Both the position numbers and the translations under genes were made by a program. DNA of 64,000 nucleotides from Ranitomeya imitator (lineage: Eukaryota). Below are positions 11,301-35,580 of the stretch, in pieces; the stretch's first letter is position 1; each line of letters starts with the position of its first letter. The notes beneath the pieces were generated by a model. It did no database searches. It saw nothing but the letters and a program-made list of their open reading frames with translations, and was not told the DNA's origin. The DNA is taken from contig NC_091286.1 in the NCBI RefSeq assembly GCF_032444005.1, forward strand, positions 278,256,001 through 278,320,000. Direction: 5' to 3'.

Positions 11301-12577
11301 CAAACAAAAAAACTAAACACACCGTGAAAAAACTAGGGTGGGGAGGAGGACATTCCTTATATGATACCTAGGCTTGAAGCTGCCTGACAGCGGGGGTTGG
11401 CGCCCTAGGGGGAACGTTGTGGCGCCCCCGCTCAACGGCGGCTGGCCCGGGGGTCCCTAGAACGACCCTAGTATTCCCAAAGGGTCCCTCTACCCACACA
11501 GTGATGTACTAAAGGTACCCCTGTAAGCTATACATATAGCAACCTGAACCTAGGGAAACTTCAAACCCCACACCTGTGTATTAAAAACAATGAGAGAACA
11601 TGCATTTTCACACTTAATATGTGACTATTCTAGTATAACCTTACTTAAACAGATGATACTGTAATTGCCTCTATCAGCACTGTGGGGTGCACACACCAGC
11701 AGATGTCCACCATACCACATTCAGTCCAGTGTTATAATGAACACTTTTAGGACCAGATTTAATGTCCACCACCAGTCTGATGTCATACATATACTACCAA
11801 CTGAGACTCATGTATGTAATAAACCTGTGTCTCATACAGCCATGTCAAATTCCAGCCGGAATGCATTTCAAAGATAAAAGCACATGTACTCATCGTATAG
11901 TGAGGTGCCGTCCGCCTACTGTTCCTAAGTAGCCTCAACGCGTTTTGCCTCTCTGGCTCATCAGGAGGCTCGATTAATGATCATTTGTCTCGATGGTGCA
12001 GGATATATAAAAATCGCGATGTGATTTACCTCAATTTAACACAGCGCTGCTGTGTGACACGCAGATCCAGAGTGTGTTCCACTGTGTGCAGCCGCAAGGA
12101 TAGGCATTCGGTTCTACTAGTTAGAGATGAGCGCCTATTCTACTTCCGGATGCTACACAGGAAGTCCATCCTGGCGTCCTTTTCTGGCGGGTTCTGATTT
12201 AAATTGAGGTAAATCACATCGCGATTTTTATATATCATGCACCATCGAGAGTGCAAAAGTAGCTTTGAGAAGCAATGATTAGCTGATGATATAACGTAGT
12301 CACCCCGCAGTCCTGATCTGCATCTACTGTGAAGGCACAATCTACAAACATCATCAGCATGCTGCTCTTTAGCTATGTGCTGCTATGTAATTCTCTGCCC
12401 TGCTGTCTCTATGACCAACCATGCTGTTTAGTGCTCTGCCTTGGCTTCTTGCTTTATCATCCGTCTGCTCTGCCATAGTCTTCCTCTATCTCCTGTGTTC
12501 TGCAGTCAACATAGTGATTCCCCTCAGACATGCATATTCTAGAATACCCGATGCGTTAGAATCGGGCCACAATCTAG

Positions 12578-13140
12578 TATATAGATAATGTAGCCCCTCC
12601 ATAGAATACAATGTAGCCCTCCTCATATAGTATAATGCAGCCCCCATAGAATATAATGTAGCCCACTCAGAGTATAATGAAGCCCCCATACAATATAATC
12701 TAGCCCCCATAGAATATAATGCAGCCCCCCATAAAATATAATGCAACCCCTTAGAGTATAATGAAGTCCTGCATACAATATAATCTAGGCCCCATAGAAT
12801 ATAATACAGCCCCCATAGAATACAATGTAGCCCCCTCATGTAGTATAATGTAGCCCCCTATGCAATCACCCTTCATAGAATATATGAATATAATACAGCC
12901 CCCATAGAATATAATGTAGCCTCCCATAGAATTTAATACAGCCCACCTCCCATAGAATATAATGTAGCCTCCCATAGAATTTAATACAGCCCACCTCCCA
13001 TAGAATATAATGTAGCCCCCATAGAATATAATACATACCACCTCCCCATAGAATATAATGTACTCCCCATAGAATATAATACAGCCCACCTCCCCATAGA
13101 ATATAATACAGCCCCCCATAGAATATAATGTAGCCCCCCC
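12578..13140. repeat. Minisatellite (about 20-24 bp; ccccatagaatataatgtagc), left-arm copy
   Basis: Tandem degenerate units, the reverse complement of 24742-25353. Confidence 0.9.
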
Positions 13141-15543
13141 GAGAATGGCCCCACAGTACTCACTGATGTATTAAAAAAACACAATCCTCACCTCTCCTCA
13201 TGCCCCACGCTGCTCCAGGCTCTGCTCCAGTCTCAACAGCAGCACACAGTGGGCGATCGATTAAGTAACGTCATTGCACACCCGCAGTGTCAGAGACAGG
13301 GGAATGATGGGAGAGGGAGCATCATCTGACGCTCTCTCCTCCATCATGGCTTTGAATGCAGCAGCGGTGCGAGGGGTCGAGTTGGCGCTGGCGGCAGGCG
13401 GGCCCCCCTGACTCAGGGGCCCCATAGCGGCTGCGTGATGTGCAGCTATGAACGGCACGCCACTGGCTGGGGGACCCTGGTGGAGCCGGCCCTGTGCATA
13501 AAAAGACAATAGCAGCGTGCAGCGAGTGCTCCACAAATCAGACCATATGCACCTATAAAAGTCTATGAGTGCATGTAAGACTTCAGACTGCACTCAGATG
13601 TTATCAGAGTGCAGTCTGATATATGCACACAAAGACAATGGAGAAGATGGAGAAATTAAGCTCTCTGCCTTCTCTGCACCTGTGATATCATTCTCTCATG
13701 TGAGAGAATCGATCACAGGGAACTGACACTCTGCTTAACCAATGATGAGAGTTTGTGTCGAGTGCACTGTAATTAGGATAATCATCGCAGTTCTCTCGCA
13801 TGAGAAAATATATACTAGTATGAGCGACCCCTATTACAGAACGCAGTGGTCCTTGGCTAGCAATCACAGTGACGTTATCACTCTTGGTATCATTCATTTT
13901 TTTATATCACTTTTTTTTCATTTCTTTTTTACTTTTATTACATTGGAGGTTTGTTTGCTGTGCAGTGTGTGACTGGTGTGGAGGTGCATTAAAAAAAACT
14001 TACCAGTGATGTAGTGTTGTCTCTATGGGAAGGAACACTTCTCCTGGGTGGCAGCACAGCTACTGTACTGTTTCCTGACAGGCACTGCTGTGCAACGTGA
14101 GGACAACGTCAGCGGTCAGGAGTCACATAGGAAGGTCCTGCCGCTGAACAGCAGCTGCCAGCCCACCTCACAGTATAAATGATAATACAGAAGCCAGCTG
14201 TAGGAGTGAGGATGGATAGCCATAGCAGAACAGGAGAAGATGCAGAGTGCAGGTCTGGTAAGTATGACACGCCTGAGTGCTCCTGCCTCCGGATCACCGC
14301 CGACATTACTATAAGTAGCACAAGGCAGTGCAGTGCCGGGGAAAGGCTTGCATTGCAGAACAGATAAGATGCACTTACATCTGTCTCTTCTGCAAAGCGA
14401 AGCACTGCCTTGTGCTATTTGGATTGTGCGCTCAATTGTGGAACCAGCAGGGGGCCCCAGGCAGCTGCCTGGTCTGCCTGCCCATAACGCCAGCCCTGAT
14501 GCTGTGAATAAGAAAGCCCTCGTCATTCACCTCTCCAGCTGCTGCCAGGTCCTCTGCACGTCCTGCATGTCATCCTCACTTGGTAGGCCTTAGACATTGT
14601 TGTGAAAACCCCTTTCCTGGGTAAGCTAATTTGGGATGAGATACAAGTGATCTCCAGATGTGCCACTGTTGGTCCAATTAATAGAGATGCATCAGAGACA
14701 AGAACACTCACAGACAGTATCTGTCAGTATACAAGAATAGTCTGGCTTCAGATCGCAAGCCACGGGTATCTTATCACCCCAACAGGAAGAAAAGAGGATG
14801 GCTTAATACGGTACGTTACTTAAAGAAAATATAAGCTTAGAAACACAGTACCATAAATCATGGCTTCTGCCAGCTCCAAGAACTAGCTAAAACTATCTCC
14901 CAGTGTAGCAACATATTTAAACAAAGCTTGCCAACACAGTGTTTCATTGCTTTTATGTATGAAACATATAAAGATAATTTAAACACAAAGTTATTAAAGA
15001 TATGCACTGTATATAGTGAGACAGCAATCATAGCTGAGAGTCATTATGTGTCCCCCTGGATGCACACAGAAGCCTATGAAACCCGCTGGAGTGCACTGTA
15101 ATCACAGCCGCACCTGTGGTTGCAATGCAAAAAAAAGAGTGTGGATTTGGTCAAACTATTTGGTCAAGTCAGATTTAAGAAATCCTGATATGGGCTTTTA
15201 TTTTTGAAGAGATCTGCAGGATTGATAGTGGGACGGATCTCTTGCTTCACTCCGGGTTTTGCGAGTAGCCCACGTCCACAATTCACATTAAAACTTTGAG
15301 TTGAAGTTTGGGTGTGTCATTGTTTGGTTTTGCAAGCTTGAGAGCAGGAGCTTTCTGCAGTACGCGTCTGTGTGAAACTAAACACAGGCCAGAGCCAGAG
15401 GAAACAAACACAGGAGTCTGCCCACGGCAACGGTCGTTGCCTTTTACCGCACTGTGTGAACACATCTGCATTACGATACATATATATATTACGATACATT
15501 ACGATACGATGCATTACGATACATATATATATATATATATATA

Positions 15544-16970
15544 CAGTACAGACCAAAAGTTTGGACACACCTTCTCATTTTAACATTTTTCTGTATTTTC
15601 ATGACTATGAAAATTGTAAATTCACACTGAAGGCATCAAAACTATGAATTAACACATGTGGAATTATATACTTAACAAAAAAGTGTGAAACAACTGAAAA
15701 TATGTCTTATATTCTAGGTTCTTCAAAGTAGCCACCTTTTGCTTTGATGACTGCTTTGCACACTCTTGGCATTCTCTTGATGAGCTTCAAGTGGTAGTCG
15801 CCGGGAATGGTCTTCCAACAATCTTGAAGGAGTTCTCAGAGATGCTTAGCACTTGTTGGCCCTTTTGCCTTCACTCTGTGGTCCAGCTCACCCCAAACCA
15901 TCTCGATTGGGTTCAGGTCTAATGACTGTGGAGGCCAGGTCATCTGGCGTAGCACCCCATCACTCTCCTTCTTGGTCAAATAGCCCTTACACAGCCTGGA
16001 GGAGTGTTTGGGGTCATTGTCCTGTTGAAAAATAAATGATGGTCCAACTAAACGCAAAGCGGATGAAATGGAGTGGTAGCCATGCTGGTTCAGTATGCCT
16101 TCAATTTTGAATAAGTCCCCAACAGTGTCACCAGCAAAGCACCCCCACACTATCACACCTCCTCCTCCATGCTTCACGGTGGGAACCAGGCATGTAGAGT
16201 ACATCCGTTCACCTTTTCTGTGTTGCACAAAGACACGGTGGTTGGAACCAAAGATCTCAAATTTGGACTCATCTGACCAAACACAGATTTCAACTGGTCT
16301 AATGTCCATTGCTTGTGTTCTTTAGCCCAAACAAGTCTCTTCTGCTTGTTGCCTGTCCTTAGCAGTGGTTTCCTAGCAGCTATTTTACCATGAAGGCCTG
16401 CTGCACAAAGTCAACTCTTAACAGTTGTTGTAGAGATGTGTCTGCTGCTAGAACTCTTTGTGGCATTGACCTGGTCTCTAATCTGAGCTGCTGTTAACCT
16501 GCGATTTCTGAGGCTGGGAACTCGGATAAACTTATCGTCAGAAGCAGAGGTGACTCTTGGTCTTCCTTTCCTGGGGCGGTCCTCATGTGAGCCAGTTTCT
16601 TTGTAGCGCTTGATGGTTTTTGCAACTGCACTTGGGGACACTTTCAAAGTTTTCCCAATTTTTTGGACTGACTGACCTTTATTTCTTAAAGTAATGATGG
16701 CCATGCATCTTTCTTTACTTAGCTGCTTTTTTCTTGCCATAATACAAATTCTAACAGTCTATTCAGTAGGACTATCAGCTGTGTATCCACCAGACTTCTG
16801 CTCAACACAACTGATGGTCCCAACCCCAATTATAAAGCAAGAAATCCCACTTATTAAACCTGACAGGGCACACTTTTGAAGTGAAAAACATTTCTGGTGA
16901 CTACCTCTTGAAGCTCATCAAGAGAATGCTAAGAGTGGGCAAAGCAGTCATCAAGGCAAAAGGTAGCTAC
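15544..16970 (-). mobile_element. Tc1 element with broken transposase, left-arm copy
   Basis: (TA)n|cagtacagaccaaaagtttggacac TIR at 15544. ORFs 16411..16740 (HTH) and 15836..16309 ([20 protein letters not shown]). The other long TIR is truncated at about 16970. Confidence 0.9.
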
Positions 16971-17149
16971 TAGTTAAAACCTACAAGAGAAAAAAGTAAA
17001 TGAAAACCCTGATGTAGCTAAGTAAAAAAGCAAAAGTGCATTTAAATAATACAGAGTTTTTAGTAATACTGTTTTTTGATCAAAAAATAGCACAAAAGCC
17101 ATCCCACCTCGTCACGGTAACTCTGATCGGGACAGTCCTACACTGTCTA

Positions 17150-17510
17150 CTAATGTTGAGCATTCCGATACTGCAAATATCGGGTATCAGACGATATTTG
17201 CTGTATCGGAATTCTGATACCGAGTTCCGATATTTTTGAGATATCGGAAATCGGAATCGGAAGTTCCTATAAGTTCCCAGTCATCTTCGGCGTGTGCGGT
17301 GCATATGGTTCCCAGGGTCTGGAGGAGAGGAGACTCTCCTTAAGGCCCTGGGATCCATATTCATGTAAAAAATAAAGAATAAAAATAAAAAATATGGATA
17401 TACTCACCCCTCCGGCAAACCCTGGCTGTCACCACTGCAAGCGTCTGCCTCCATTCCTAAGAATGCAGTGGGTGAAGGACCTTCAATGACATCACGGTCA
17501 CACCTACCGA
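17150..17510. mobile_element. hAT-type MITE fragment, left-arm copy (right-arm copy about 20372-20732)
   Basis: taatgttgagcattccgatac terminus and tatcgg/ccgata subterminal repeats. Confidence 0.5.
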
Positions 17511-18727
17511 TCTCCTCCAGATCTTTCAGTTTTCAGGACTGTCATTGGGCAACATTGAGTTTCATCTCCCTTCAAAGATTTTCTGTTGGGTTCAGGTCTG
17601 GACACTGGCTAGGCCACTACATGACCTTGAAATGCTTCTTACAAAGCCACTCCTTAGTCACCCTGGCTGTGTGTTTAGGGTCATTGTTATACTGGAAGAC
17701 CTAGCCACTACCCATCTTCAATGCTCCTACTGAGGGAAGTTGGCTAAAATCTCTCGATACATGATCCAATCCATCCTCCCTTCCATATCATGCAGTCATA
17801 CTGTCCCCTTTGCAGAAAAGCATCCCCAAAGTATTATGTTTCCCCTCCATGCTTAAAGATTGGGATGGTGTACTGTGGGTTATACTCATCCTTCTTCTTC
17901 CTCCAAACACGGCGAGTAGAGTTGATACCAAAAGGTTCAATTTTGGTCTCATCTGAGCACATGACCTCTCTAATGCCTCCTCTGTATCATCCAGATGGTC
18001 ATTGGCCAACTTCAAACAGGCATGGAGTTGTGCTTGCGTGAGCAGAAGAATCTTGCATGCCCTTCAGGATTTTATTCTATGATGGCGCAGTGTGTTACAA
18101 ACAGTAATGCTTGAGACTGTGATCCCAGCTCTCTTCTGGTCATTGATCAGATCCTCCTCTGTAGTTATGGGCTGATTCCTGACCTATCTCAGAATTATCA
18201 GAATTCCACGAGGCAAATGGAGCTCCAGACCAAGGAAGACTGACAGTCATCTTGTGCTTCTTACTTATTATAATAATTTTGCCACCAGCTGTTGTCTTCT
18301 CGCTAAGCTGCTTGCCTATTGCCCTATAACCCATCCCAGCCTTGTGCAAGTCTACAATTTCTCCATCGTGTCCTTAGACAGCTCTTCGGTCTTGGCCATG
18401 GAGGAGAGGTTGGAGTGTGATTGAAAGACAGGTGTCTTTCATACAGGTAACGAGTTCAAACAGGTGCAATATCCAGGTAATGAGTGCAGAGTAGGAGGGC
18501 TCCTTAATGAGAAACTAACAGGTCTGTGAGAGCCAGAATTCTTTCCGGCTGGAAGGTGATCAAATACTTATTTCATGCAATTTCAATATTTAAAAATTAT
18601 ATAATGTGATTTTTTGCGTTGTATTTTTAGATTCTGTCTCTCACAGGTGAAGTGTACCTACGATAAAAATTACAGACCTCTCCATTCTCTGTAAATTGTA
18701 AAACTTGTAAAATCATCAGTGTATCAA
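17510..18727 (-). mobile_element. Degenerate Tc1, left-arm copy lacking the terminal 19 bp of its TIR
   Basis: Mirror of 19155-20372. It ends ...catcagtgtatcaa and then joins the hairpin. Confidence 0.85.
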
Positions 18728-18840
18728 TTCACAATGGTGGTGGCCCCCAGCAGTTTGATCCTAGGTGTTATACATTTACTATATGCCCTGTGTGTATAAC
18801 ACCTAGGATCAAACTGCTGGGGGCCACCACCATTGTGAAT
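18727..18840. repeat. Perfect 48-bp inverted repeat with 18-nt loop
   Basis: attcacaatggtggtggcccccagcagtttgatcctaggtgttataca (18727-18774) and its exact reverse complement (18793-18840). Confidence 0.95.
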
Positions 18841-19135
18841 GAAGCAGTAGTGCATATGCATGACCACCGCGCCATTCTCATTGTCTATGGAAGCGGCAGT
18901 GATAAATGTACCCTTTCCCTCAATTACCATCTTTTTTTTTTCTTCATCTTGTTGTCCTGTTACATAAGTTAAAGCAAAATATTCCCAATGGCAATTTTAG
19001 ACTGATAGGTCTAAAAATAATAGTGCAGTAGTCTTCTTAGGAAAGCAGAATTGTATCCTTAGATCTGTAGTAAAAAGTGACATAAAGAATGAAAGGCAAG
19101 ATACATAAAAAGGTTTACTGGATAGTAATGTAATG

Positions 19136-20372
19136 CAGTGGGGAAAATAAGTATTTGATACACTGATGATTTTACAAGTTTTACAATTTACAGAGAATGG
19201 AGAGGTCTGTAATTTTTATCGTAGGTACACTTCACCTGTGAGAGACAGAATCTAAAAATACAACGCAAAAAATCACATTATATAATTTTTAAATATTGAA
19301 ATTGCATGAAATAAGTATTTGATCACCTTCCAGCCGGAAAGAATTCTGGCTCTCACAGACCTGTTAGTTTCTCATTAAGGAGCCCTCCTACTCTGCACTC
19401 ATTACCTGGATATTGCACCTGTTTGAACTCGTTACCTGTATGAAAGACACCTGTCTTTCAATCACACTCCAACCTCTCCTCCATGGCCAAGACCGAAGAG
19501 CTGTCTAAGGACACGATGGAGAAATTGTAGACTTGCACAAGGCTGGGATGGGTTATAGGGCAATAGGCAAGCAGCTTAGCGAGAAGACAACAGCTGGTGG
19601 CAAAATTATTATAATAAGTAAGAAGCACAAGATGACTGTCAGTCTTCCTTGGTCTGGAGCTCCATTTGCCTCGTGGAATTCTGATAATTCTGAGATAGGT
19701 CAGGAATCAGCCCATAACTACAGAGGAGGATCTGATCAATGACCAGAAGAGAGCTGGGATCACAGTCTCAAGCATTACTGTTTGTAACACACTGCGCCAT
19801 CATAGAATAAAATCCTGAAGGGCATGCAAGATTCTTCTGCTCACGCAAGCACAACTCCATGCCTGTTTGAAGTTGGCCAATGACCATCTGGATGATACAG
19901 AGGAGGCATTAGAGAGGTCATGTGCTCAGATGAGACCAAAATTGAACCTTTTGGTATCAACTCTACTCGCCGTGTTTGGAGGAAGAAGAAGGATGAGTAT
20001 AACCCACAGTACACCATCCCAATCTTTAAGCATGGAGGGGAAACATAATACTTTGGGGATGCTTTTCTGCAAAGGGGACAGTATGACTGCATGATATGGA
20101 AGGGAGGATGGATTGGATCATGTATCGAGAGATTTTAGCCAACTTCCCTCAGTAGGAGCATTGAAGATGGGTAGTGGCTAGGTCTTCCAGTATAACAATG
20201 ACCCTAAACACACAGCCAGGGTGACTAAGGAGTGGCTTTGTAAGAAGCATTTCAAGGTCATGTAGTGGCCTAGCCAGTGTCCAGACCTGAACCCAACAGA
20301 AAATCTTTGAAGGGAGATGAAACTCAATGTTGCCCAATGACAGTCCTGAAAACTGAAAGATCTGGAGGAGAT
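19136..20372 (+). mobile_element. Degenerate Tc1 with complete 5' TIR, right-arm copy
   Basis: cagtggggaaaataagtatttgatacac at 19136; atggccaagaccgaagagctgtctaagg start at 19483; the transposase is frameshifted. Confidence 0.85.
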
Positions 20373-20911
20373 CGGTAGGTGTGACCGTGATGTCATTGAA
20401 GGTCCTTCACCCACTGCATTCTTAGGAATGGAGGCAGACGCTTGCAGTGGTGACAGCCAGGGTTTGCCGGAGGGGTGAGTATATCCATATTTTTTATTTT
20501 TATTCTTTATTTTTTACATGAATATGGATCCCAGGGCCTTAAGGAGAGTCTCCTCTCCTCCAGACCCTGGGAACCATATGCACCGCACACGCCGAAGATG
20601 ACTGGGAACTTATAGGAACTTCCGATTCCGATTTCCGATATCTCAAAAATATCGGAACTCGGTATCAGAATTCCGATACAGCAAATATCGTCTGATACCC
20701 GATATTTGCAGTATCGGAATGCTCAACATTAGTAGACAGTGTAGGACTGTCCCGATCAGAGTTACCGTGACGAGGTGGGATGGCTTTTGTGCTATTTTTT
20801 GATCAAAAAACAGTATTACTAAAAACTCTGTATTATTTAAATGCACTTTTGCTTTTTTACTTAGCTACATCAGGGTTTTCATTTACTTTTTTCTCTTGTA
20901 GGTTTTAACTA

Positions 20912-22338
20912 GTAGCTACCTTTTGCCTTGATGACTGCTTTGCCCACTCTTAGCATTCTCTTGATGAGCTTCAAGAGGTAGTCACCAGAAATGTTTTTCA
21001 CTTCAAAAGTGTGCCCTGTCAGGTTTAATAAGTGGGATTTCTTGCTTTATAATTGGGGTTGGGACCATCAGTTGTGTTGAGCAGAAGTCTGGTGGATACA
21101 CAGCTGATAGTCCTACTGAATAGACTGTTAGAATTTGTATTATGGCAAGAAAAAAGCAGCTAAGTAAAGAAAGATGCATGGCCATCATTACTTTAAGAAA
21201 TAAAGGTCAGTCAGTCCAAAAAATTGGGAAAACTTTGAAAGTGTCCCCAAGTGCAGTTGCAAAAACCATCAAGCGCTACAAAGAAACTGGCTCACATGAG
21301 GACCGCCCCAGGAAAGGAAGACCAAGAGTCACCTCTGCTTCTGACGATAAGTTTATCCGAGTTCCCAGCCTCAGAAATCGCAGGTTAACAGCAGCTCAGA
21401 TTAGAGACCAGGTCAATGCCACAAAGAGTTCTAGCAGCAGACACATCTCTACAACAACTGTTAAGAGTTGACTTTGTGCAGCAGGCCTTCATGGTAAAAT
21501 AGCTGCTAGGAAACCACTGCTAAGGACAGGCAACAAGCAGAAGAGACTTGTTTGGGCTAAAGAACACAAGCAATGGACATTAGACCAGTTGAAATCTGTG
21601 TTTGGTCAGATGAGTCCAAATTTGAGATCTTTGGTTCCAACCACCGTGTCTTTGTGCAACACAGAAAAGGTGAACGGATGTACTCTACATGCCTGGTTCC
21701 CACCGTGAAGCATGGAGGAGGAGGTGTGATAGTGTGGGGGTGCTTTGCTGGTGACACTGTTGGGGACTTATTCAAAATTGAAGGCATACTGAACCAGCAT
21801 GGCTACCACTCCATTTCATCCGCTTTGCGTTTAGTTGGACCATCATTTATTTTTCAACAGGACAATGACCCCAAACACTCCTCCAGGCTGTGTAAGGGCT
21901 ATTTGACCAAGAAGGAGAGTGATGGGGTGCTACGCCAGATGACCTGGCCTCCACAGTCATTAGACCTGAACCCAATCGAGATGGTTTGGGGTGAGCTGGA
22001 CCACAGAGTGAAGGCAAAAGGGCCAACAAGTGCTAAGCATCTCTGAGAACTCCTTCAAGATTGTTGGAAGACCATTCCCGGCGACTACCACTTGAAGCTC
22101 ATCAAGAGAATGCCAAGAGTGTGCAAAGCAGTCATCAAAGCAAAAGGTGGCTACTTTGAAGAACCTAGAATATAAGACATATTTTCAGTTGTTTCACACT
22201 TTTTTGTTAAGTATATAATTCCACATGTGTTAATTCATAGTTTTGATGCCTTCAGTGTGAATTTACAATTTTCATAGTCATGAAAATACAGAAAAATGTT
22301 AAAATGAGAAGGTGTGTCCAAACTTTTGGTCTGTACTG
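20912..22338 (+). mobile_element. Tc1 element with broken transposase, right-arm copy
   Basis: ORFs 21142..21471 and 21573..22046; TIR ends ggtctgtactg|(TA)n at 22338. Confidence 0.9.
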
Positions 22339-24741
22339 TATATATATATATATATATATGTATCGTAATGCATCGTATCGTAATGTATCGTAATATATAT
22401 ATGTATCGTAATGCAGATGTGTTCACACAGTGCGGTAAAAGGCAACGACCGTTGCCGTGGGCAGACTCCTGTGTTTGTTTCCTCTGGCTCTGGCCTGTGT
22501 TTAGTTTCACACAGACGCGTACTGCAGAAAGCTCCTGCTCTCAAGCTTGCAAAACCAAACAATGACACACCCAAACTTCAACTCAAAGTTTTAATGTGAA
22601 TTGTGGACGTGGGCTACTCGCAAAACCCGGAGTGAAGCAAGAGATCCGTCCCACTATCAATCCTGCAGATCTCTTCAAAAATAAAAGCCCATATCAGGAT
22701 TTCTTAAATCTGACTTGACCAAATAGTTTGACCAAATCCACACTCTTTTTTTTGCATTGCAACCACAGGTGCGGCTGTGATTACAGTGCACTCCAGCGGG
22801 TTTCATAGGCTTCTGTGTGCATCCAGGGGGACACATAATGACTCTCAGCTATGATTGCTGTCTCACTATATACAGTGCATATCTTTAATAACTTTGTGTT
22901 TAAATTATCTTTATATGTTTCATACATAAAAGCAATGAAACACTGTGTTGGCAAGCTTTGTTTAAATATGTTGCTACACTGGGAGATAGTTTTAGCTAGT
23001 TCTTGGAGCTGGCAGAAGCCATGATTTATGGTACTGTGTTTCTAAGCTTATATTTTCTTTAAGTAACGTACCGTATTAAGCCATCCTCTTTTCTTCCTGT
23101 TGGGGTGATAAGATACCCGTGGCTTGCGATCTGAAGCCAGACTATTCTTGTATACTGACAGATACTGTCTGTGAGTGTTCTTGTCTCTGATGCATCTCTA
23201 TTAATTGGACCAACAGTGGCACATCTGGAGATCACTTGTATCTCATCCCAAATTAGCTTACCCAGGAAAGGGGTTTTCACAACAATGTCTAAGGCCTACC
23301 AAGTGAGGATGACATGCAGGACGTGCAGAGGACCTGGCAGCAGCTGGAGAGGTGAATGACGAGGGCTTTCTTATTCACAGCATCAGGGCTGGCGTTATGG
23401 GCAGGCAGACCAGGCAGCTGCCTGGGGCCCCCTGCTGGTTCCACAATTGAGCGCACAATCCAAATAGCACAAGGCAGTGCTTCGCTTTGCAGAAGAGACA
23501 GATGTAAGTGCATCTTATCTGTTCTGCAATGCAAGCCTTTCCCCGGCACTGCACTGCCTTGTGCTACTTATAGTAATGTCGGCGGTGATCCGGAGGCAGG
23601 AGCACTCAGGCGTGTCATACTTACCAGACCTGCACTCTGCATCTTCTCCTGTTCTGCTATGGCTATCCATCCTCACTCCTACAGCTGGCTTCTGTATTAT
23701 CATTTATACTGTGAGGTGGGCTGGCAGCTGCTGTTCAGCGGCAGGACCTTCCTATGTGACTCCTGACCGCTGACGTTGTCCTCACGTTGCACAGCAGTGC
23801 CTGTCAGGAAACAGTACAGTAGCTGTGCTGCCACCCAGGAGAAGTGTTCCTTCCCATAGAGACAACACTACATCACTGGTAAGTTTTTTTTAATGCACCT
23901 CCACACCAGTCACACACTGCACAGCAAACAAACCTCCAATGTAATAAAAGTAAAAAAGAAATGAAAAAAAAGTGATATAAAAAAATGAATGATACCAAGA
24001 GTGATAACGTCACTGTGATTGCTAGCCAAGGACCACTGCGTTCTGTAATAGGGGTCGCTCATACTAGTATATATTTTCTCATGCGAGAGAACTGCGATGA
24101 TTATCCTAATTACAGTGCACTCGACACAAACTCTCATCATTGGTTAAGCAGAGTGTCAGTTCCCTGTGATCGATTCTCTCACATGAGAGAATGATATCAC
24201 AGGTGCAGAGAAGGCAGAGAGCTTAATTTCTCCATCTTCTCCATTGTCTTTGTGTGCATATATCAGACTGCACTCTGATAACATCTGAGTGCAGTCTGAA
24301 GTCTTACATGCACTCATAGACTTTTATAGGTGCATATGGTCTGATTTGTGGAGCACTCGCTGCACGCTGCTATTGTCTTTTTATGCACAGGGCCGGCTCC
24401 ACCAGGGTCCCCCAGCCAGTGGCGTGCCGTTCATAGCTGCACATCACGCAGCCGCTATGGGGCCCCTGAGTCAGGGGGGCCCGCCTGCCGCCAGCGCCAA
24501 CTCGACCCCTCGCACCGCTGCTGCATTCAAAGCCATGATGGAGGAGAGAGCGTCAGATGATGCTCCCTCTCCCATCATTCCCCTGTCTCTGACACTGCGG
24601 GTGTGCAATGACGTTACTTAATCGATCGCCCACTGTGTGCTGCTGTTGAGACTGGAGCAGAGCCTGGAGCAGCGTGGGGCATGAGGAGAGGTGAGGATTG
24701 TGTTTTTTTAATACATCAGTGAGTACTGTGGGGCCATTCTC

Positions 24742-25353
24742 GGGGGGGCTACATTATATTCTATGGGGGGCTGTATTATATTCTATGGGGAGGTGGGCTG
24801 TATTATATTCTATGGGGAGTACATTATATTCTATGGGGAGGTGGTATGTATTATATTCTATGGGGGCTACATTATATTCTATGGGAAGGTGGGCTGTATT
24901 ATATTCTATGGGCGGCTACATTATATTCTATGGGAGGTGGGCTGTATTAAATTCTATGGGAGGCTACATTATATTCTATGGGAGGTGGGCTGTATTAAAT
25001 TCTATGGGAGGCTACATTATATTCTATGGGGGCTGTATTATATTCATATATTCTATGAAGGGTGATTGCATAGGGGGCTACATTATACTACATGAGGGGG
25101 CTACATTGTATTCTATGGGGGCTGTATTATATTCTATGGGGCCTAGATTATATTGTATGCAGGACTTCATTATACTCTAAGGGGTTGCATTATATTTTAT
25201 GGGGGGCTGCATTATATTCTATGGGGGCTAGATTATATTGTATGGGGGCTTCATTATACTCTGAGTGGGCTACATTATATTCTATGGGGGCTGCATTATA
25301 CTATATGAGGAGGGCTACATTGTATTCTATGGAGGGGCTACATTATCTATATA
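24742..25353. repeat. Minisatellite (gggggctgcattatattctat-type), continuing at 27060-27176 and 32866-33830
   Basis: The same G-rich strand orientation holds on both sides of the Helitron array and the Gypsy insertion, so it is one interrupted tract. Confidence 0.9.
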
Positions 25354-27058
25354 CTAGATTGTGGCCCGATTCTAACGCATCGGGTATTCTAGAATATGCA
25401 TGTCCCCGTAGTATATGGACAATGATGATTCCAGAATTCGCAGCACACTGTGCCCGTCGCTGATTGGTCGAGGCAACCTTTATGACATCATCGTCGCCAT
25501 GGCAACCATTATGACATCTACGTCGATACTGTGCCCGTCGCTGAATCAGAAACGTGAGATGTCTACGTCCTTTATGACATCATCGTCGCTGTGCCCGTTG
25601 CTGATTGGTTGAGGCCTGGCGGCCTCAACCAATCAGAGACGCGGGATTTCTACGTCGATGCTGTGCCGGCCTCGACCAATCAGAGAGCCGGGATTTCCAG
25701 GACAGACAGACAGACAGACAGACAGATGGAAAAACCCTTAGACAATTATATATGTACTAGATTGTGGCCCGATTCTAACGCATCGGGTATTCTAGAATAT
25801 GCATGTCCCCATAGTATATGGACAATGATGATTCCAGAATTCGCGGCACACTGTGCCTGTCACTGATTGGTCGAGGCAACCTTTATGACATCATCGTCGC
25901 CATGGCAACCATTATGATATCTACGTCGATACTGTGCCCGTCGCTGAATCAGAAACATGAGATGTCTACGTCCTTTATGACATCATCGTCGCTGTGCCTG
26001 TTGCTGATTGGTCGAGGCCTGGCGGCCTCGACCAATCAGAGACCGGCACAGCATCGACGAAGAAATCCCGCCTGGCGGCCTCGACCAATCAGCAACAGGC
26101 ACAGCGACGATGATGTCATAAAGGACGTAGACATCTCATGTTTCTGATTCAGCGACGGGCACAGTATCGACGTAGATGTCATAATGGTTGCCATGGCGAC
26201 GATGATGTCATAAAGGTTGCCTCGACCAATCAGCGACAGGCACAGTGTGCCGCGAATTCTGGAATCATCATTGTCCATATACTATGGGGACATGCATATT
26301 CTAGAATACCCGATACGTTAGAATCGGGCCACAATCTAGTATAGATATAATTGTCTAAGGGTTTTTTCCGTCTGTCTGTCTTTCGGTCTGTCTGTCTTTC
26401 TGTCTGTCTGTCTGTCCTGGAAATCCCGCGTCTCTGATTGGTCGAGGCCGCCAGGCCTCGACCAATCAGCGACGGGCACAGCGACGATGATGTCATAAGG
26501 GATGTAGAAATCCCACGTTTGATTGGTCGAGGTCGCCAGGCCTCGACCAATCAGCAACGGGCACAGCGACGATGATGTCATAAGGGACGTAGAAATCCCA
26601 CGTTTGATTGGTCGAGGTCGCCAGGCCTCGACCAATCAGCAACGGGCACAGCGACGATGATGTCATAAGGGATGTAGAAATCCCACGTTTGATTGGTTGA
26701 GGTCGCCAGGCCTCGACCAATCAGCAACGGGCACAGCGACGATGATGTCATAAAGGACGTAGACATCCCGCGTCTCTGATTGGTCGAGGTCGCCAGGCCT
26801 TGACCAATCAGCAATGGGCACAGCGACGATGATGTCATAAAGGACGTAGAAATCCCACGTTTCTGATTCAGCGACGGGCACAGTATCGATGGAGATGTCA
26901 TAATGGTTGCCATGGCGACGATGATGTCATAAAGGTTGCCTTGACCAATCAGCGAGGGGCACAGTCTGCCGCAAATTCTGGAATCATCATTGTCCATATA
27001 CTACGGGGACATGCATATTCTAGAATACCCGATGCGTTAGAATCGGGCCACAATCTAG
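25354..27058. mobile_element. Four-unit non-autonomous Helitron concatemer arranged -,-,+,+
   Basis: The 3' terminus CCCGAT-gcgttaga-ATCGGG-ccacaat-CTAG occurs at 25354(-), 25757(-), 26339(+) and 27058(+). 5'-type ends carry tataattgtctaaggg and a (GTCT)n microsatellite. Flanks are A (25353) and T (27059) with no TSD. Confidence 0.8.
26450..26880 (+). repeat. 85-bp tandem repeat (about 5 copies) inside Helitron unit 4
   Basis: gcgacgatgatgtcata recurs at 26481, 26566, 26651, 26736 and 26823. Confidence 0.9.
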
Positions 27059-27176: not shown

Positions 27177-27924
27177 TGTTATGGCTGGCAATCAGGCAAC
27201 ACAGCGTGCAGTAATCAGCGCACATACAGAGATCTGGCAATAACCAAAAACAATAGGACGAGCTCTGAGACGTGGAATCTCTGTAGACTGCAGTACCTGA
27301 TCTATCCTCACACAACTATAAGCAGCAGTGGATTGCGCCTATCACTACCTATGCAACTCGGCACCGCCTGAGGAGCTGACTAGCCTGAAGATAGAAATAC
27401 AAGCCTGACTTACCTCAGAGAAATACCCCAAAGGAATAGGCAGCCCCCCACATATAATGACTGTTAGCAAGATGAAAAGACAAACGGAGGAATGAAATAG
27501 ATTCAGCAAAGTGAGGCCCGATATTCTAGACAGAGCGAGGATAGCAAAGAGAACTATGCAGTCTACAAAAAACCCTAAAACGAAAACCACGCAAAGGGGC
27601 AAAAAGACCCACCGTGCCGAACTAACAGCACGGCGGTGCACCCCTTTGCTTCTCAGAGCTTCCAGCAAAAGTTAATAGCAAGCTGGACAGAAAAAACAGA
27701 AAACAAACTAGAAGCACTTATCTAGCAGAGCAGCAGGCCCAAGGAAAGATGCAGTAGCTCAGATCCAACACTGGAACATTGACAAGGAGCAAGGAAGACA
27801 GACTCAGGTGGAGCTAAATAGCAAGGCAGCCAACGAGCTCACCAAAACACCTGAGGGAGGAAGCCCAGAGACTGCAATACCACTTGTGACCACAGAAGTG
27901 AACTCAGCCACAGAATTCACAACA
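27177..27924 (-). repeat. 3' LTR of the Gypsy element
   Basis: Direct repeat of 32118-32865; ORF-track translations of the two LTRs are identical. Confidence 0.95.
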
Positions 27925-30900
27925 GTACCCCCCCCTTGAGGAGGGGTCACCGAACCCTCACCAGAACCCCCAGGCCGACCAGGATGAGCCACATGAAAGG
28001 CACGAACAAGATCTGGGGCATGGACATCAGAGGCAAAAACCCAGGTATTATCTTCCTGAGCATAACCCTTCCATTTGACCAGATACTGGAGTTTCCGTCT
28101 AGAGACACGAGAATCCAAAATCTTCTCCACAATATACTCCAATTCCCCCTCCACCAAAACAGGGGCAGGAGGCTCCACAGATGGAACCATAGGTGCCACG
28201 TATCTCCTCAACAACGACCTATGGAATACATTATGTATGGAAAAGGAGTCTGGGAGGGTCAGACGAAAAGACACCGGATTGAGAATCTCAGAAATCCTAT
28301 ACGGACCAATAAAACGAGGTTTAAATTTAGGAGAGGAAACCTTCATAGGAATATGACGAGAAGATAACCAAACCAGATCCCCAACACGAAGTCGGGGTCC
28401 CACACGGCGTCTGCGATTAGCGAAAAGCTGAGCCTTCTCCTGGGACAAGGTCAAATTGTCCACTACCTGAGTCCAGATCTGCTGCAACCTGTCCACCACA
28501 GAATCCACACCAGGACAGTCCGAAGACTCAACCTGTCCTGAAGAGAAACGAGGATGGAACCCAGAATTGCAGAAAAATGGAGAGACCAAGGTAGCCGAGC
28601 TGGCCCGATTATTAAGGGCGAACTCAGCCAACGGCAAAAATGACACCCAATCATCCTGGTCAGCGGAAACAAAACATCTCAGATATGTTTCCAAGGTCTG
28701 ATTGGTTCGTTCGGTCTGGCCATTAGTCTGAGGATGGAAGGCCGAGGAGAAAGATAGGTCAATGCCCATCCTACCACAAAAGGCTCGCCAGAACCTCGAG
28801 ACAAACTGGGAACCTCTGTCAGAAACAATATTCTCAGGAATGCCATGTAAACGAACCACATGCTGGAAGAACAAAGGCACCAAATCAGAGGAGGAAGGCA
28901 ATTTAACCAAGGGCACCAGATGGACCATTTTAGAAAAGCGATCACAGACCACCCAAATGACCGACATTTTTTGAGAAACGGGAAGGTCAGAAATGAAATC
29001 CATCGAAATATGTGTCCAAGGCCTCTTCGGGACCGGCAAGGGCAAAAGCAACCCACTGGCACGTGAACAGCAGGGCTTAGCCCTAGCACAAATTCCACAG
29101 GACTGCACAAAAGCACACACATCCCGTGACAGAGATGGCCACCAGAAGGATCTAGCAACCAACTCCCTGGTACCAAAGATTCCTGGATGACCGGCCAGCA
29201 CCGAACAATGAAGTTCAGAGATAACTTTACTAGTCCACCTATCAGGGACGAACAGTTTCTCGGTCGGACAACGATCAGGTTTATTAGCCTGAAATTTCTG
29301 CAACACTCTCCGCAAATCAGGGGTAATGGCAGACACAATGACTCCTTCCTTGAGGATACTCGCCGGCTCAGATAACCCCGGAGAGTCGGGCACAAAACTC
29401 CTAGACAGAGCATCCGCCTTCACATTTTTAGAGCCCGGAAGGTATGAAATCACAAAATCAAAACGAGCAAAAAATAACGACCAACGGGCCTGTCTAGGAT
29501 TCAAGCGCTTGGCAGACTCAAGATAAGTAAGGTTCTTATGATCAGTCAAAACCACCACGCGATGCTTAGCACCCTCAAGCCAATGACGCCACTCCTCGAA
29601 TGCCCACTTCATGGCCAGCAACTCTCGGTTGCCCACATCATAATTACGCTCAGCAGCAGAAAATTTCCTGGAAAAGAAAGCACATGGTTTGAACACTGAG
29701 CAACCAGAACCTCTCTGTGACAAAACCGCCCCATCACCAATCTCAGAAGCATCAACCTCGACCTGGAACGGAAGAGAAACATCAGGTTGACACAACACAG
29801 GGGCACAGCAAAAACGACGCTTCAACTCCTGAAAAGCTTCCACGGCAGCAGAAGACCAATTAACCAAATCAGCACCCTTCTTGGTCAAATCGGTCAATGG
29901 TCTGGCAATGCTAGAAAAATTACAGATGAAGCGACGATAAAAATTAGCAAAGCCCAGGAATTTCTGCAGACTTTTTAGAGATGTCGGCTGAGTCCAATCC
30001 TGGATGGCCTGAACCTTAACCGGATCCATCTCGATAGTAGAAGGGGAAAAGATGAACCCCAAAAATGAAACTTTCTGCACACCGAAGAGACACTTTGATC
30101 CCTTCACGAACAAGGAATTAGCACGCAGTACCTGGAAAACCATTCTGACTTGCTTCACATGAGACTCCCAATCATCTGAGAAGATCAAAATGTCATCCAA
30201 GTAAACAATCAAGAATTTATCCAGATACTCACGGAAAATGTCATGCATAAAAGACTGAAAAACAGATGGAGCATTGGCAAGTCCGAACGGCATCACCAGA
30301 TACTCAAAATGACCCTCGGGCGTATTAAATGCCGTTTTCCATTCATCTCCCTGCCTGATTCTCACCAGATTATACGCACCACGAAGATCAATCTTAGTAA
30401 ACCAACTAGCCCCCTTAATCCGAGCAAACAAGTCAGAAATCAATGGCAAGGGATACTGAAACTTAACAGTGATCTTATTAAGAAGGCGGTAATCAATACA
30501 CGGTCTTAGCGAACCATCCTTCTTGGCTACAAAAAAGAACCCTGCTCCCAATGGTGACGACGATGGGCGAATATGTCCCTTCTCCAGGGACTCCTTCACA
30601 TAACTGCGCATAGCGGTGTGTTCAGGTACGGACAAATTAAATAAACGACCCTTAGGGAATTTACTACCAGGAATCAAATCGATAGCACAATCACAATTCC
30701 TATGCGGAGGTAGGGCATCAGACTTGGACTCTTCAAATACATCCTGAAAGTCCGACAAGAACTCTGGGATGTCAGAAGGAATGGATGACGAAATAGACAA
30801 AAATGGAACATCACCATGTACTCCCTGACAACCCCAGCTGGTTACCGACATAGAGTTCCAATCCAATACTGGATTATGGGTTTGTAGCCATGGCAACCCC

Positions 30901-32117: not shown

Positions 32118-32865
32118 TGTTATGGCTGGCAATCAGGCAACACAGCGTGCAGTAATCAGCGCACATACAGAGATCTGGCAATAACCAAAAACAATAGGAC
32201 GAGCTCTGAGACGTGGAATCTCTGTAGACTGCAGTACCTGATCTATCCTCACACAACTATAAGCAGCAGTGGATTGCGCCTATCACTACCTATGCAACTC
32301 GGCACCGCCTGAGGAGCTGACTAGCCTGAAGATAGAAATACAAGCCTGACTTACCTCAGAGAAATACCCCAAAGGAATAGGCAGCCCCCCACATATAATG
32401 ACTGTTAGCAAGATGAAAAGACAAACGGAGGAATGAAATAGATTCAGCAAAGTGAGGCCCGATATTCTAGACAGAGCGAGGATAGCAAAGAGAACTATGC
32501 AGTCTACAAAAAACCCTAAAACGAAAACCACGCAAAGGGGCAAAAAGACCCACCGTGCCGAACTAACAGCACGGCGGTGCACCCCTTTGCTTCTCAGAGC
32601 TTCCAGCAAAAGTTAATAGCAAGCTGGACAGAAAAAACAGAAAACAAACTAGAAGCACTTATCTAGCAGAGCAGCAGGCCCAAGGAAAGATGCAGTAGCT
32701 CAGATCCAACACTGGAACATTGACAAGGAGCAAGGAAGACAGACTCAGGTGGAGCTAAATAGCAAGGCAGCCAACGAGCTCACCAAAACACCTGAGGGAG
32801 GAAGCCCAGAGACTGCAATACCACTTGTGACCACAGAAGTGAACTCAGCCACAGAATTCACAACA
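32118..32865 (-). repeat. 5' LTR of the Gypsy element
   Basis: TGTTG...TAACA on the minus strand; TATA-like TATTTAG at 32761-32755. Confidence 0.95.
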
Positions 32866-35580
32866 GGGGCTGCATTATATTCTATGGGGGTTACATTATA
32901 TTGTACGGCATGGCTGCATTATACTCTGAGGGGGCTATCTTATATTCTGTGGGGTGGCTGCATTATACTCTAGGGTGGCTGCATTATGCTCTATGAGGTG
33001 GCTGCATTATACTATATGTGGGCTGCATTATACTGTATCGAGGACTATGGGAAATACATTATACTATATGAAGAAATATGGTGTGCATTAAACTATGGGA
33101 AGTGAATTGTACTACATGGATGACTATGGTGGTGCATTATACTAAATGGAGCACTCTGAGGAGTGCATTATACTATATGGAGGACTGAGCAGTGTATTTT
33201 AATACATGGAGGACTATGAGGAGTGTATTATACTATATGGAAGACTGAGGAGTGTGTTATACTATATGGAGAACTGAGTGTATTTTAATATATGGAGGGC
33301 TATGAGGAGTGTAAAATAATATATGGAGGATTGAGGAGTGTATTATACTACATGGAGGACTGAGGAGTGTATTATACTATATGGAGGACTGAGCAGTGTA
33401 TTCTAATTTGTGGAAGACTATGAGGAGTATATTATACTATATGGAGGACTATGGGAAGTGTATATGGAAGACTGAGGAGTGTATTTTAATATATGGAGGA
33501 CTACAGGGAGTGTATTATACTATTTGGAGGACTATAGGGAGTGTATCATTCTATATAGAGGACTATGGAGAGTGTATTATACTATATGGAGTACTATAGG
33601 GAGTGTATTATACTATATGGAGAGCTATGAGGAGTGTATTATACTATATGGAGGCCTATGGGGCACAATATGTTATATGGAGGACTATGGGGTGTACATT
33701 TTACAATATGGAGGACTGTGGTGCACATTATGTGACATGAAGGACTATGGTGTTTGCATTTTACAATATGGAGGACTGTGGTGCACATTATACTATGTGG
33801 AGGACTATGGGTTTTATTATACTATACAAGCAAAATGCTGCATATTTATCGAGTGATTGGATTGTTTATGCGGGAACAGAAATCCTTGTTCCCAGCAGCA
33901 GATCGCTGGTGTAAACTGTAGATGTGCTGCTGATAACATGATACTGTATGGGGACAGATTGATCTATTAGTGATTGTTCTGTTCCCATCATTCTTTCTCA
34001 GTTGGTGTAAAGATCCCGGGAAACAAGCGTCAAATGACTTCAATATTGTTGATCACACTCGTTTAGCGGCCTGAACTCAGTGCTTGTAAATACAACAGAA
34101 AATCTTTTGTGTGATGTGTGATAAGTTATCATTTAGGGCCCCTTTTTAGCCACTTTCTGACATTAGATGTACTATCCCTTCGAGATGGTATGGGCTCGTA
34201 CTATCAGCCATGCTCACAGGGGGAGCGCGGCCGATCAAGGCCGGGTGTCAGCTGACTATCATAGCTGACATCCGGCACTATGTGCCAGAAGCGGTCACGG
34301 ACCGCTCCTAGCACGTTAACCCCCGTAACACTGTGATCAAACATAATTGTAGCATTACGGCGGAATAAGGTAGCATCGCGCAGGGAGGGGGCTCCCTGAG
34401 TGCTTCCCTGAGACCCTCGGAGCAACACTATGTGATCGCGATGCTCCGAGCATCTCCTCTGTCCTCCTCCCTGCAGGCCCCAGATCCAAGATGACCGCGG
34501 GTTTCCTTCCGGGTCCTGCAGGGAGGTGGCTTGCAAGCAGCTAATCAGAGCAAGCGCCTGCAAGCCTCCTGCAGTGCCTGTCAGATCGCTGATCTGACAC
34601 AATACATTGCAAAGTGTCAGATCAGCGATCTGACACTATAACATGATGTCCCACACAGGGACAAAGTAAAAAAGTAAAAAATATATTTACATGTGTAAAA
34701 AAAATATATATTTATATTGTTCCAATAAATACATTTCTTTCTGTAAATAATAAAAACAACAACAATAAAAGTGCACATATTTAATATGGCCGCATCCATA
34801 ATGACCCGACCTATAAAACTGTCACAATAGTTAACCCCTTCAGTGAACACCGTAAAAAAAAAAAACTAGGCAAAAAACAATGCTTTATCATCATACCGCC
34901 GAACAAAAAGTGAAATAACACGCGATCAAGAAGATGGATATAAATAAACATTGTACTGTTGAAAACGTCATCTTATCCCGCAAAAAACGAGCCGCCATAC
35001 AGCGTCATCAGCAAAAAAATAAAAAAGTTACAGCCTCAGAATAAAGCGATGCAAAAATATTTTTTTCTATAAAATAGCTTTTATTGTATAAAAGCGCCAA
35101 AACATAAAAAAATTATATAAATGAGGTATCGCTGTAATCGTACTGACCCGAAAAATAAAACTTCTTTATCAATTTTACCAAATGCTGAATGGTATTAAAT
35201 GTCCCCCCAAAAGAAATTCACGAATTGCTGGTTTTTGTTCATTCTGCCTAAACAGAAATCGGAATAAAAAGCGATCAAAAAATGTCGTGTGCCCGAAAAT
35301 GATACCAATAAAAACGTCAACTCGTCCCGCAAAAAAAAAAGATCTTACATGACTCTGTGGACCAAAATATGGAAAAATTATAGCTCTCGGAATGTGGTAA
35401 CGCAAAAAATATTTTTTGCAATAAAAAGCGTCTTTTAGTGTGTGACAGCTGCCAATCATAAAAACCCGACATAAAAACCCACTATAAAAACCTGCTATAA
35501 ATAGTAAATCGAACCCCCCATTATCACTGCCTTAGTTAGGGAAAAATAATAAAGTAAAAAATGTATTCATTTCCATTTTC

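What the first reader, a model, noticed from the sequence alone, without database searches (positions are those of the whole stretch)
18727..18840. Perfect 48-bp hairpin begins at the exact base where the long left arm ends
Seen: a mismatch-free 48-bp stem with an 18-nt loop shares base 18727 with the end of the 6.2-kb arm, and replaces the 19 terminal Tc1 TIR bases present in the right arm. Each stem contains CCTAGG. Inference: two successive fold-backs, one short and one long, as expected from serial template switching. Alternatively a pre-existing hairpin stalled the fork or acted as a surrogate rolling-circle terminator.
Basis: partly seen in the sequence, partly recalled or inferred. Interest (0 to 1): 0.7.

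Follow-up and report, generated by a model that had tools for sequence, protein, structure and literature searches.

The report
Hairpin is the palindrome's own centre
The perfect 48-bp hairpin is real in this poison-frog assembly, but it is the innermost part of the neighbouring 12.9-kb inverted duplication, made when that duplication formed; short-read contigs of the same species show only the unrearranged single-stem version, so the rearrangement still needs confirming.

Summary
**Observation: confirmed.** The stems are 18727-18774 and 18793-18840, 48/48 complementary, with an 18-nt loop.

**What it is.** Read outward from the loop, the hairpin and the 6.2-kb arms form one palindrome. The left arm differs from the right only by lacking two stretches:
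- 315 bp: 295 bp of unique flank plus the 19-nt Tc1 tip, with 1 nt of junction overlap.
- One 49-bp satellite unit.

**The hairpin was made at the junction.**
- Contigs of a sister species and of the same species read flank, one stem, the loop, then unrelated sequence. The single stem is therefore ancestral.
- The hairpin is not a MITE and did not exist before the event.
- The loop belongs to the left (copied) arm.
- The strand-inverting joint is loop|right stem (18792/18793), with up to 3 nt of microhomology.
- The joint at 18727 is a same-strand skip, not a second fold-back.

**Mechanism and caveat.**
- All new joints and both losses lie in the left arm. This fits one error-prone, template-switching copying event of the known fold-back inversion kind.
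- Neither derived joint appears in the two same-species runs. The structure may be a private young variant or a chimeric-molecule or assembly artefact, at roughly even odds.

The scan had already noted the large palindrome on this window (s1-292469).

The parts
12527..18726 (-). Left arm, main block. It is an inverted copy of 19156-25404 and carries both losses (315 bp and 49 bp) and the outer novel joint.
   Evidence: blocks of 5731 bp and 469 bp at 100% identity.
18727..18774 (+). Left stem S. It is the innermost 48 bp of the left arm and the inverted copy of 18793-18840.
18775..18792 (+). Loop L (18 nt). This is ancestral single-copy sequence and the centre of the whole palindrome. It is contiguous with S as in the ancestral allele, so it belongs to the copied arm.
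   Evidence: contigs of X1, X2 and X3 read flank-S-L; no other copy in the window.
18793..18840 (+). Right stem S'. This is ancestral sequence contiguous with the unique flank. The strand-inverting joint lies at 18792/18793. TGT at 18793-18795 may be microhomology.
   Evidence: the X1/X2 piece ends exactly at 18793, and the X3 piece runs L plus 3 nt. Also.
18841..19135 (+). Unique flank U (295 bp). It is present only in the right arm. It is single-copy in the reads and conserved in the sister species.
19136..19154 (+). Terminal 19 nt of the Tc1 inverted terminal repeat. It is present only in the right arm.
   Evidence: very high repeat depth begins here.
19155..25404 (+). Right arm, in ancestral context. 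It holds a Tc1 fragment, a second Tc1-like element at 20891-22175 with HTH and DDE_3 ORFs, a 21/48-bp satellite, and the first 63 bp of a Helitron unit.
24887..24935 (+). 49-bp satellite unit present only in the right arm. The joint is ambiguous over 22 bp of repeat homology, as expected for slippage.
12520..12533 (.). Outer novel joint (12526|12527) between the unrelated left flank and the truncated Helitron end of the left arm.
25405..25683 (+). Continuation of the Helitron unit beyond the right arm's end. It shows that the right arm's outer end is not a breakpoint.
   Evidence: 25342-25683 aligns without a break to 25745-26092 at 91.7%.

Best explanation
**What it is.** The hairpin is not a separate element. 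It is the centre of one inverted duplication, 12527-25404.

**Ancestral order, from reads.** Unknown left flank, then the 18-nt loop sequence in the opposite orientation, then the right stem, the 295-bp flank, the complete Tc1 end, and the rest of the right arm running on into a Helitron.

**Derived order.** An inverted copy of that segment, starting with the loop, was placed to its left.
- The copy's first 48 bp now face their template across the loop as a perfect hairpin.
- The copy skipped 315 bp, which created the 18727/18728 joint, and it lost one 49-bp satellite unit.
- The strand-inverting joint is loop|right stem, with up to 3 nt (TGT/ACA) of microhomology.

**Most likely mechanism (inferred, not shown).**
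- A growing DNA end moving leftward stopped at the end of the stem.
- It paired through ACA/TGT with the same-polarity strand 18 nt ahead, which would be the lagging-strand template.
- It then copied about 6.6 kb backwards in an error-prone way with two slips, and finally switched or was joined to the left flank.
- This is a microhomology-mediated template-switch or fold-back inversion event.

Zero substitutions between the arms make the event very young.
For: - **One palindrome:** reading outward from the loop gives 48 + 5731 + 469 bp at 100% identity, with only two gaps, both in the left arm.
- **Right arm is ancestral at both ends:** the Helitron unit runs unbroken across 25404, and the Tc1 TIR is complete and abuts the flank.
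- **Sister species (run X3):** its contig covers 19161-18820 and then joins on the opposite strand to 18749-18795. That reads flank, S, L, 3 nt, then stops. It also carries the same Tc1 insertion, so the locus is orthologous.
- **Same species (X1, X2):** a 721-nt contig ends its match exactly at 18793. It covers the loop, since depth 10.8 = 15.2 x 17/24 and 6.38 = 9 x 17/24. It then continues 335 nt in sequence that is not on the stretch.
- **Not a dispersed repeat:** there is no other copy of stem or loop in the window.
- **Literature:** fold-back inversions use 2-8 bp inverted microhomology and single-copy spacers (PMC3907307). Stems can be as short as 4 bp, with a median loop of about 36 nt in repair-proficient yeast (PMC7467729). 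[quoted passage not shown]
Against: - Neither derived joint, 18727/18728 or loop|S', appears in contigs of the two same-species runs. Depth is 0 at 18744-18767, and the ancestral contig runs unbranched through S and L. The derived allele is therefore absent from that sample.
- If that sample is the sequenced animal, the structure is not germline.
- The ancestral left flank was not recovered. It is therefore unknown whether the left flank (up to 12526) was the original neighbour.
- The 3-nt microhomology rests on the sister species only.
- A switch followed by 6.6 kb of backward synthesis is long for a simple fork error.
- The 315-bp loss could be a later, separate deletion.
Confidence: 0.5

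Rival explanations
1. The structural reading is the same, but the rearranged molecule is not in the germline. It would be a chimeric DNA molecule, made by a strand-displacing polymerase in vitro or by a rare somatic event, or a wrongly kept assembly path.
For: - Same-species contigs (X1, X2, one sample, the only genome-scale sample listed for this species) carry the ancestral order at single-copy depth, with no branch and no derived joints.
- Several closely spaced template switches with 0-3 nt of microhomology are also the signature of polymerase chimeras (PMC6218980).
Against: - The palindrome sits between two different unique flanks and has unequal arms. This does not fit the usual long-read fold-back artefact, which is symmetric about the read's middle. 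PacBio HiFi shows virtually none of these (PMC12870357).
- An assembler cannot invent joints that lack homology, so at least one read carried them.
- Assemblers normally drop paths supported by a single read.
- It is not known whether X1/X2 come from the sequenced animal.
Confidence: 0.4
2. One reading: two successive fold-backs, a short one making the hairpin and a long one making the 6.2-kb arm.
For: The hairpin and the long arm abut at 18727. The junction-made origin is supported.
Against: After the right stem's inverted copy, the left arm continues with the Tc1 in the same relative order and orientation as in the right arm. Only 315 bp are missing. The 18727 joint therefore does not change strand. 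One fold-back plus one skip explains everything.
Confidence: 0.07
3. A break in a replicated chromosome was followed by head-to-head fusion of the two sister ends after unequal trimming, or by snap-back of the broken 3' end on itself. The short arm then broke and rejoined, and asymmetric deletions later stabilised the palindrome.
For: - An 18-nt asymmetric centre with 2-3 nt of microhomology is what unequal end trimming plus microhomology joining gives.
- Erosion of one palindrome arm near the centre is described (PMC10766186).
- Fold-back after double-strand breaks is well documented (PMC3907307, PMC7467729, PMC10622511).
Against: - It needs more independent events: fusion, a second break only 6.2 kb away, rejoining to the left flank, and two deletions that both fell in the same arm.
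- Simple local snap-back of the flank-bearing strand predicts the loop in the opposite orientation to the one seen.
Confidence: 0.15
4. The hairpin is a pre-existing small palindromic mobile element (a MITE or fold-back element) or a structured RNA gene that attracted the breakpoint.
For: It is a perfect short palindrome next to transposons. This genome holds many fold-back insertions of Penelope-like elements.
Against: - The state is single-stem in a sister species and in same-species contigs.
- Depth is single-copy, and there are no other copies in the window.
- No target-site duplication is seen.
- All Rfam matches are far below their gathering scores.
Confidence: 0.03

Closest known systems
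Fold-back inversions / inverted duplications with a single-copy spacer (human germline: PMC3907307; yeast: PMC7467729, PMC10622511)
   Same: - Two inverted copies face each other across a short single-copy spacer.
- The spacer boundary carries 2-3 nt of inverted microhomology.
- The ancestral allele has one copy.
- The 18-nt loop falls in the yeast 'large-loop' class (15 nt or more).
   Different: - This case is interstitial and small (6.2 kb). It has no terminal deletion, translocation or ring.
- The spacer is 18 nt, against 766 bp-70 kb in the human cases.
- The loop orientation fits copying of sequence ahead of the end rather than snap-back on itself.
[quoted passage not shown]
   Same: - The joint lies at a very short inverted repeat separated by tens of nucleotides.
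- The loop orientation agrees with a switch across the fork.
- One arm is eroded asymmetrically near the centre.
   Different: - ODIRA gives a direct-inverted-direct triplication with two such joints. Here there are only two copies.
- The outer joint here shows no inverted-repeat signature.
- Whether the segment contains a replication origin is unknown.
Microhomology-mediated break-induced replication / serial template switching (FoSTeS/MMBIR; from general knowledge, named in PMC9199198 and PMC10766186)
   Same: Several joints with 0-3 nt of microhomology, a jump within the template and a repeat slippage are all clustered in the newly copied segment.
   Different: This is a single natural case without pedigree or read support. 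No breakpoint insertions or point mutations are seen near the joints.
Long-read fold-back and whole-genome-amplification chimeras (PMC12870357, PMC6218980)
   Same: These are inverted joins formed by a polymerase or by read-through. The derived joints are absent from independent short-read contigs.
   Different: Technical fold-back reads are symmetric about the read's middle and have the same flank at both ends. This structure has unequal arms, a non-duplicated 18-nt loop and different unique flanks.

Membership tests
Fold-back inversion (inverted duplication with spacer) | Two adjacent copies in inverted orientation separated by a single-copy spacer | tested here: met
   arms run from 18774 and 18793 outward, and the 18-nt loop is single-copy.
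Fold-back inversion (inverted duplication with spacer) | The unrearranged allele has one copy, and the spacer is ordinary contiguous sequence | tested here: met
   contigs of X1, X2 and X3 read flank-S-L and then other sequence.
Fold-back inversion (inverted duplication with spacer) | Short inverted microhomology (2-8 bp) at the spacer/inverted-copy boundary | tested here: inconclusive
   the sister-species contig matches 3 nt (TGT) beyond the loop, complementary to ACA at the stem's end. The same-species letters after the loop were not obtainable.
ODIRA | Inverted triplication (direct-inverted-direct) with two inverted-repeat joints | tested here: not met
   only two copies in the window. The outer joint at 12526/12527 has no inverted-repeat signature.
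ODIRA | A replication origin inside the amplified segment | not testable with these tools
   No origin data exist for this genome.
MITE / fold-back transposon | Many dispersed copies and a target-site duplication | tested here: not met
   no other copy in 64 kb; single-copy depth and a single stem in relatives. No duplication flanks 18727-18840.
Technical long-read fold-back artefact (as defined in PMC12870357) | Fold within 200 bp on the opposite strand, symmetric about the read's middle, hence equal arms and the same flank at both ends | tested here: not met
   the arms differ by 315 and 49 bp; the left and right outer flanks are unrelated. This does not exclude other chimeric molecules.
microRNA or other structured RNA gene | Score at or above the Rfam gathering threshold | tested here: not met
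   the best match scores 46.2 bits against a threshold of 113. All matches are generic hairpin hits.
Helitron 3' terminator hairpin | A short GC-rich hairpin about 10 nt before a CTRR end of a Helitron, present before the event | tested here: not met
   The hairpin did not exist in the ancestral allele. It lies next to a Tc1 end, not a Helitron end.

The most novel reading that the evidence does not exclude
This is a real, very young germline inverted duplication in a vertebrate, still segregating alongside its ancestral allele. The orientation of its 18-nt loop shows that the growing strand switched to the same-polarity template ahead of it (leading to lagging strand, ODIRA-type first step) rather than snapping back on itself. 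Two further jumps are recorded in the same 6.2-kb stretch of synthesis. It would be a rare natural case in which the two fold-back models can be told apart from sequence alone.
Probability: 0.3. Interest if true: 0.5.

Novelty: new member of a known kind. Interest (0 to 1): 0.3.

Why it matters
**If real.** It would be a clean natural example of how a large palindrome arises in a vertebrate germline. The ancestral allele is at hand, every joint is readable, and the loop orientation bears on the choice between self snap-back and a switch across the fork.

**If an artefact.** It would flag a 6.3-kb false insertion in a chromosome-scale frog assembly. It would also show that multi-switch chimeric molecules can survive assembly.

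**Either way.** The hairpin needs no explanation of its own. It is not a mobile element, an RNA gene or a fork barrier.

Tried and rejected
**Attempts to recover the 335 nt that follow the loop in the same-species contig (the ancestral left flank). All failed.**
- Exact look-ups of two ORFs of the unique flank found nothing on record.
- A metagenome-contig scan for the stem-loop joint found 0 hits.
- A full representative-protein search with the ORF at 18790-18969 gave only two low-complexity chance hits.
- I ran no further search on a long shot.

**Is the left flank the ancestral neighbour?**
- If it is, the two contigs would end at about 12192 and 12243. Both points lie in the right end of a MITE-like inverted repeat at 11988-12250.
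- The fit to the expected ~30-nt run-in is poor, so I treat this as inconclusive.

**Other checks**
- Rfam gave only sub-threshold generic hairpin matches.
- A second near-match to the loop at 61400 (3 mismatches) has unrelated context and is chance.
- A Helitron-style insertion of the left arm was considered because the arm lies between an A and a T. I rejected it because the ends are not TC...CTRR and the outer end lies 12 nt beyond the CTAG.
- A Penelope-type fold-back insertion, common in this genome, was rejected. There is no target duplication, and the copied DNA is adjacent multi-element genomic sequence.
- Searches of earlier notes for assembly-artefact palindromes gave nothing useful.

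Full report
**1. Observation**

- The sequence at 18727-18840 is as described. The two 48-nt arms, 18727-18774 and 18793-18840, are 100% complementary and 18 nt apart.
- The stem occurs nowhere else in the 64-kb window at up to 3 mismatches, and shuffles expect none.
- As single-stranded DNA the region folds at -62.8 kcal/mol, against -19.5 +/- 2.9 for shuffles, z = -15.
- CCTAGG is present in both stems.
- The long inverted repeat is also real. Its blocks are 12996-18727 / 19155-24886 and 12527-13020 / 24911-25404, both 100%.
- The right arm continues for 19 more bases to a complete Tc1 terminal repeat at 19136.

**2. One palindrome, not two structures**

I read the left side, reverse-complemented, and the right side outward from the loop. 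The two sides match as follows:
- 48 bp match (the stems).
- The left side then lacks 315 bp, 18841-19155. One T fits either side of this gap.
- 5731 bp match at 100%.
- The left side then lacks 49 bp, 24887-24935. The joint is ambiguous over 22 bp inside a 48-49-bp satellite.
- 469 bp match at 100%, ending at 12527 / 25404.

The missing 315 bp are 295 bp of unique flank plus the 19-nt Tc1 tip, plus the one ambiguous T. The 'hairpin' is therefore the innermost 48 bp of the same inverted duplication, and the 18-nt loop is the centre of the whole 12.9-kb structure. The joint at 18727/18728 connects stem to Tc1 in the same order and orientation as in the right arm. It is a skip, not a second fold-back.

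**3. Which arm is the original**

- The Helitron unit that starts at about 25342 runs unbroken across 25404. The stretch 25342-25683 aligns to 25745-26092 at 91.7%.
- At the left arm's outer end, the homologous 63 bp stop at 12527 against unrelated sequence.
- At the inner end, the right arm has the complete Tc1 tip abutting its flank. That tip is part of a very high-copy repeat in the reads of four runs.
- The right arm is therefore in ancestral context at both ends. Every novel joint and both losses lie in the left arm.

**4. The ancestral state, from reads**

*Sister species (run X3, organism B)*
- A 679-nt contig at single-copy depth (6.1) covers 19161 down to 18820, with 13 substitutions and 5 gaps.
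- It includes 25 nt of the Tc1 tip, so the locus is orthologous.
- It then joins on the opposite strand to 18749-18795. That reads flank, stem S, loop L, three more letters (TGT), and then leaves the stretch.

*Same species (runs X1 and X2, one sample)*
- A 721-nt contig, at depth 15.2 and 9, matches 19160 down to exactly 18793.
- It covers the loop. Bin depths of 10.8 and 6.38 equal 17/24 of the contig depths.
- It then continues for 335 nt that lie nowhere on the stretch laid.
- A k-mer contig cannot hold both stems, and this one runs through S and L without a branch.
- Depth is 0 at 18744-18767 in both runs, and no extra depth lies over the loop|S' joint.

*Conclusions*
- (a) One stem plus the loop is the ancestral state, so the hairpin was made by the rearrangement.
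- (b) The loop is ordinary flanking sequence.
- (c) The derived allele is absent from that same-species sample.

**5. Loop orientation**

- The ancestral strand reads flank-S-L-TGT. In the window, the strand that carries the flank reads flank-S-(reverse complement of L)-S'.
- The loop is thus contiguous, in the ancestral sense, with the left (copied) arm. The strand-inverting joint is L|S' at 18792/18793.
- TGT may come from either side, and it pairs with ACA at the end of S.
- If the error-laden left arm is the newly made DNA, the growing end stopped at the last base of S and paired with TGT 18 nt further on. That pairing was on a strand of its own polarity.
- It then copied the loop, the stem and the rest backwards. 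[quoted passage not shown]
- It is not the geometry of a 3' end snapping back on itself, which would leave the loop the other way round relative to the flank-bearing arm.
- This step is inference. It depends on taking the left arm as the new copy.

**6. Mechanism and comparison**

- The picture fits the known class of fold-back inversions and microhomology-mediated template switching. It shows a very short inverted microhomology, a short single-copy spacer, a long inverted copy, a jump within the template, and a slippage in a tandem repeat.
- Human germline cases have 2-8 bp of microhomology but kilobase spacers and terminal deletions (PMC3907307).
- Yeast cases use stems as short as 4 bp, with loops of median about 36 nt when Mre11/Sae2 are intact (PMC7467729).
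- ODIRA predicts a triplication, which is not present here. This is therefore not a member of that class, even though the first step looks alike.
- The 315-bp loss could instead be a later deletion. Erosion of one arm near the centre of a palindrome is described as stabilising (PMC10766186).
- There are zero substitutions in 6,248 compared bases. At a vertebrate-like rate of about 1e-9 per site per year (general knowledge), the event is younger than roughly 0.2-0.3 million years, unless gene conversion keeps the arms alike. The flank differs by about 3.7% from the sister species.

**7. Real or artefact?**

*Against a routine technical fold-back*
- The arms are unequal, the loop is not duplicated, and the two outer flanks differ. 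Technical fold-back reads are symmetric about the read's middle and are virtually absent from PacBio HiFi (PMC12870357).
- An assembler cannot create joints without homology, so at least one molecule carried them.

*For an artefact or a somatic molecule*
- X1/X2 are the only genome-scale runs listed for this species. They carry the ancestral order at ordinary depth, with no sign of either derived joint.
- If that sample is the sequenced animal, the palindrome is not in its germline.

I cannot tell which sample was assembled, and contigs show presence better than absence. I put a real private or heterozygous variant and a chimeric-molecule or assembly artefact at roughly even odds.

**8. What it is not**

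- It is not a MITE or fold-back transposon. It has no other copies, no target duplication, and a single stem in relatives.
- It is not a pre-existing fork barrier or rolling-circle terminator.
- It is not an RNA gene. Rfam matches lie far below threshold.

**9. Verdict**

The 'two fold-backs' and the 'pre-existing hairpin' alternatives are not.
- The kind is known, so the case is of modest interest, and it needs read-level confirmation.
- The large palindrome had already been noted on this window (s1-292469).

Noticed in passing
window 27177-27925 and 32118-32866: Two 749-bp direct repeats at 100% identity, the LTR pair of an apparently very young Gypsy-type element that another note already flagged.
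   Followed up: no
window 11988-12250: A 263-bp MITE-like unit with ~44-nt terminal inverted repeats (72% inverted self-match over its length). It lies in the left flank, 276 bp from the palindrome's outer joint.
   Followed up: partly
window 20891-22175 (copy at 15707-16991): A second, short Tc1/mariner-type element with 109-nt terminal inverted repeats. Its ORFs match Sleeping-Beauty-type HTH domains and DDE_3 (E = 3e-5). It lies wholly inside each palindrome arm.
   Followed up: partly
window 18694-18727 and 19155-19188: This Tc1 copy's terminal repeat differs from the family consensus. Most of the thousands of other copies in four runs diverge after 18693 or skip 33-67 nt at 19152-19226, so this copy carries an extra ~40-nt segment in its TIR.
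   Followed up: no
window 18830-18870: A ~40-nt stretch across the right stem/flank boundary has 3-4 times the single-copy depth in all four runs, including a more distant species. This suggests a short conserved or low-copy repeated motif.
   Followed up: no
window 12585-13146 and 24736-25346: A satellite of 21-nt units, with a higher-order 48-49 nt unit, lies between the Helitron end and the rest of each arm. It is the site of the 49-bp difference between the arms.
   Followed up: partly
window 25389-25404: The palindrome's outer breakpoint lies 12 nt beyond a hairpin-plus-CTAG motif of a Helitron unit. The left arm is bounded by A (12526) and T (18793). This may be coincidence. The ends are not canonical Helitron ends.
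   Followed up: partly
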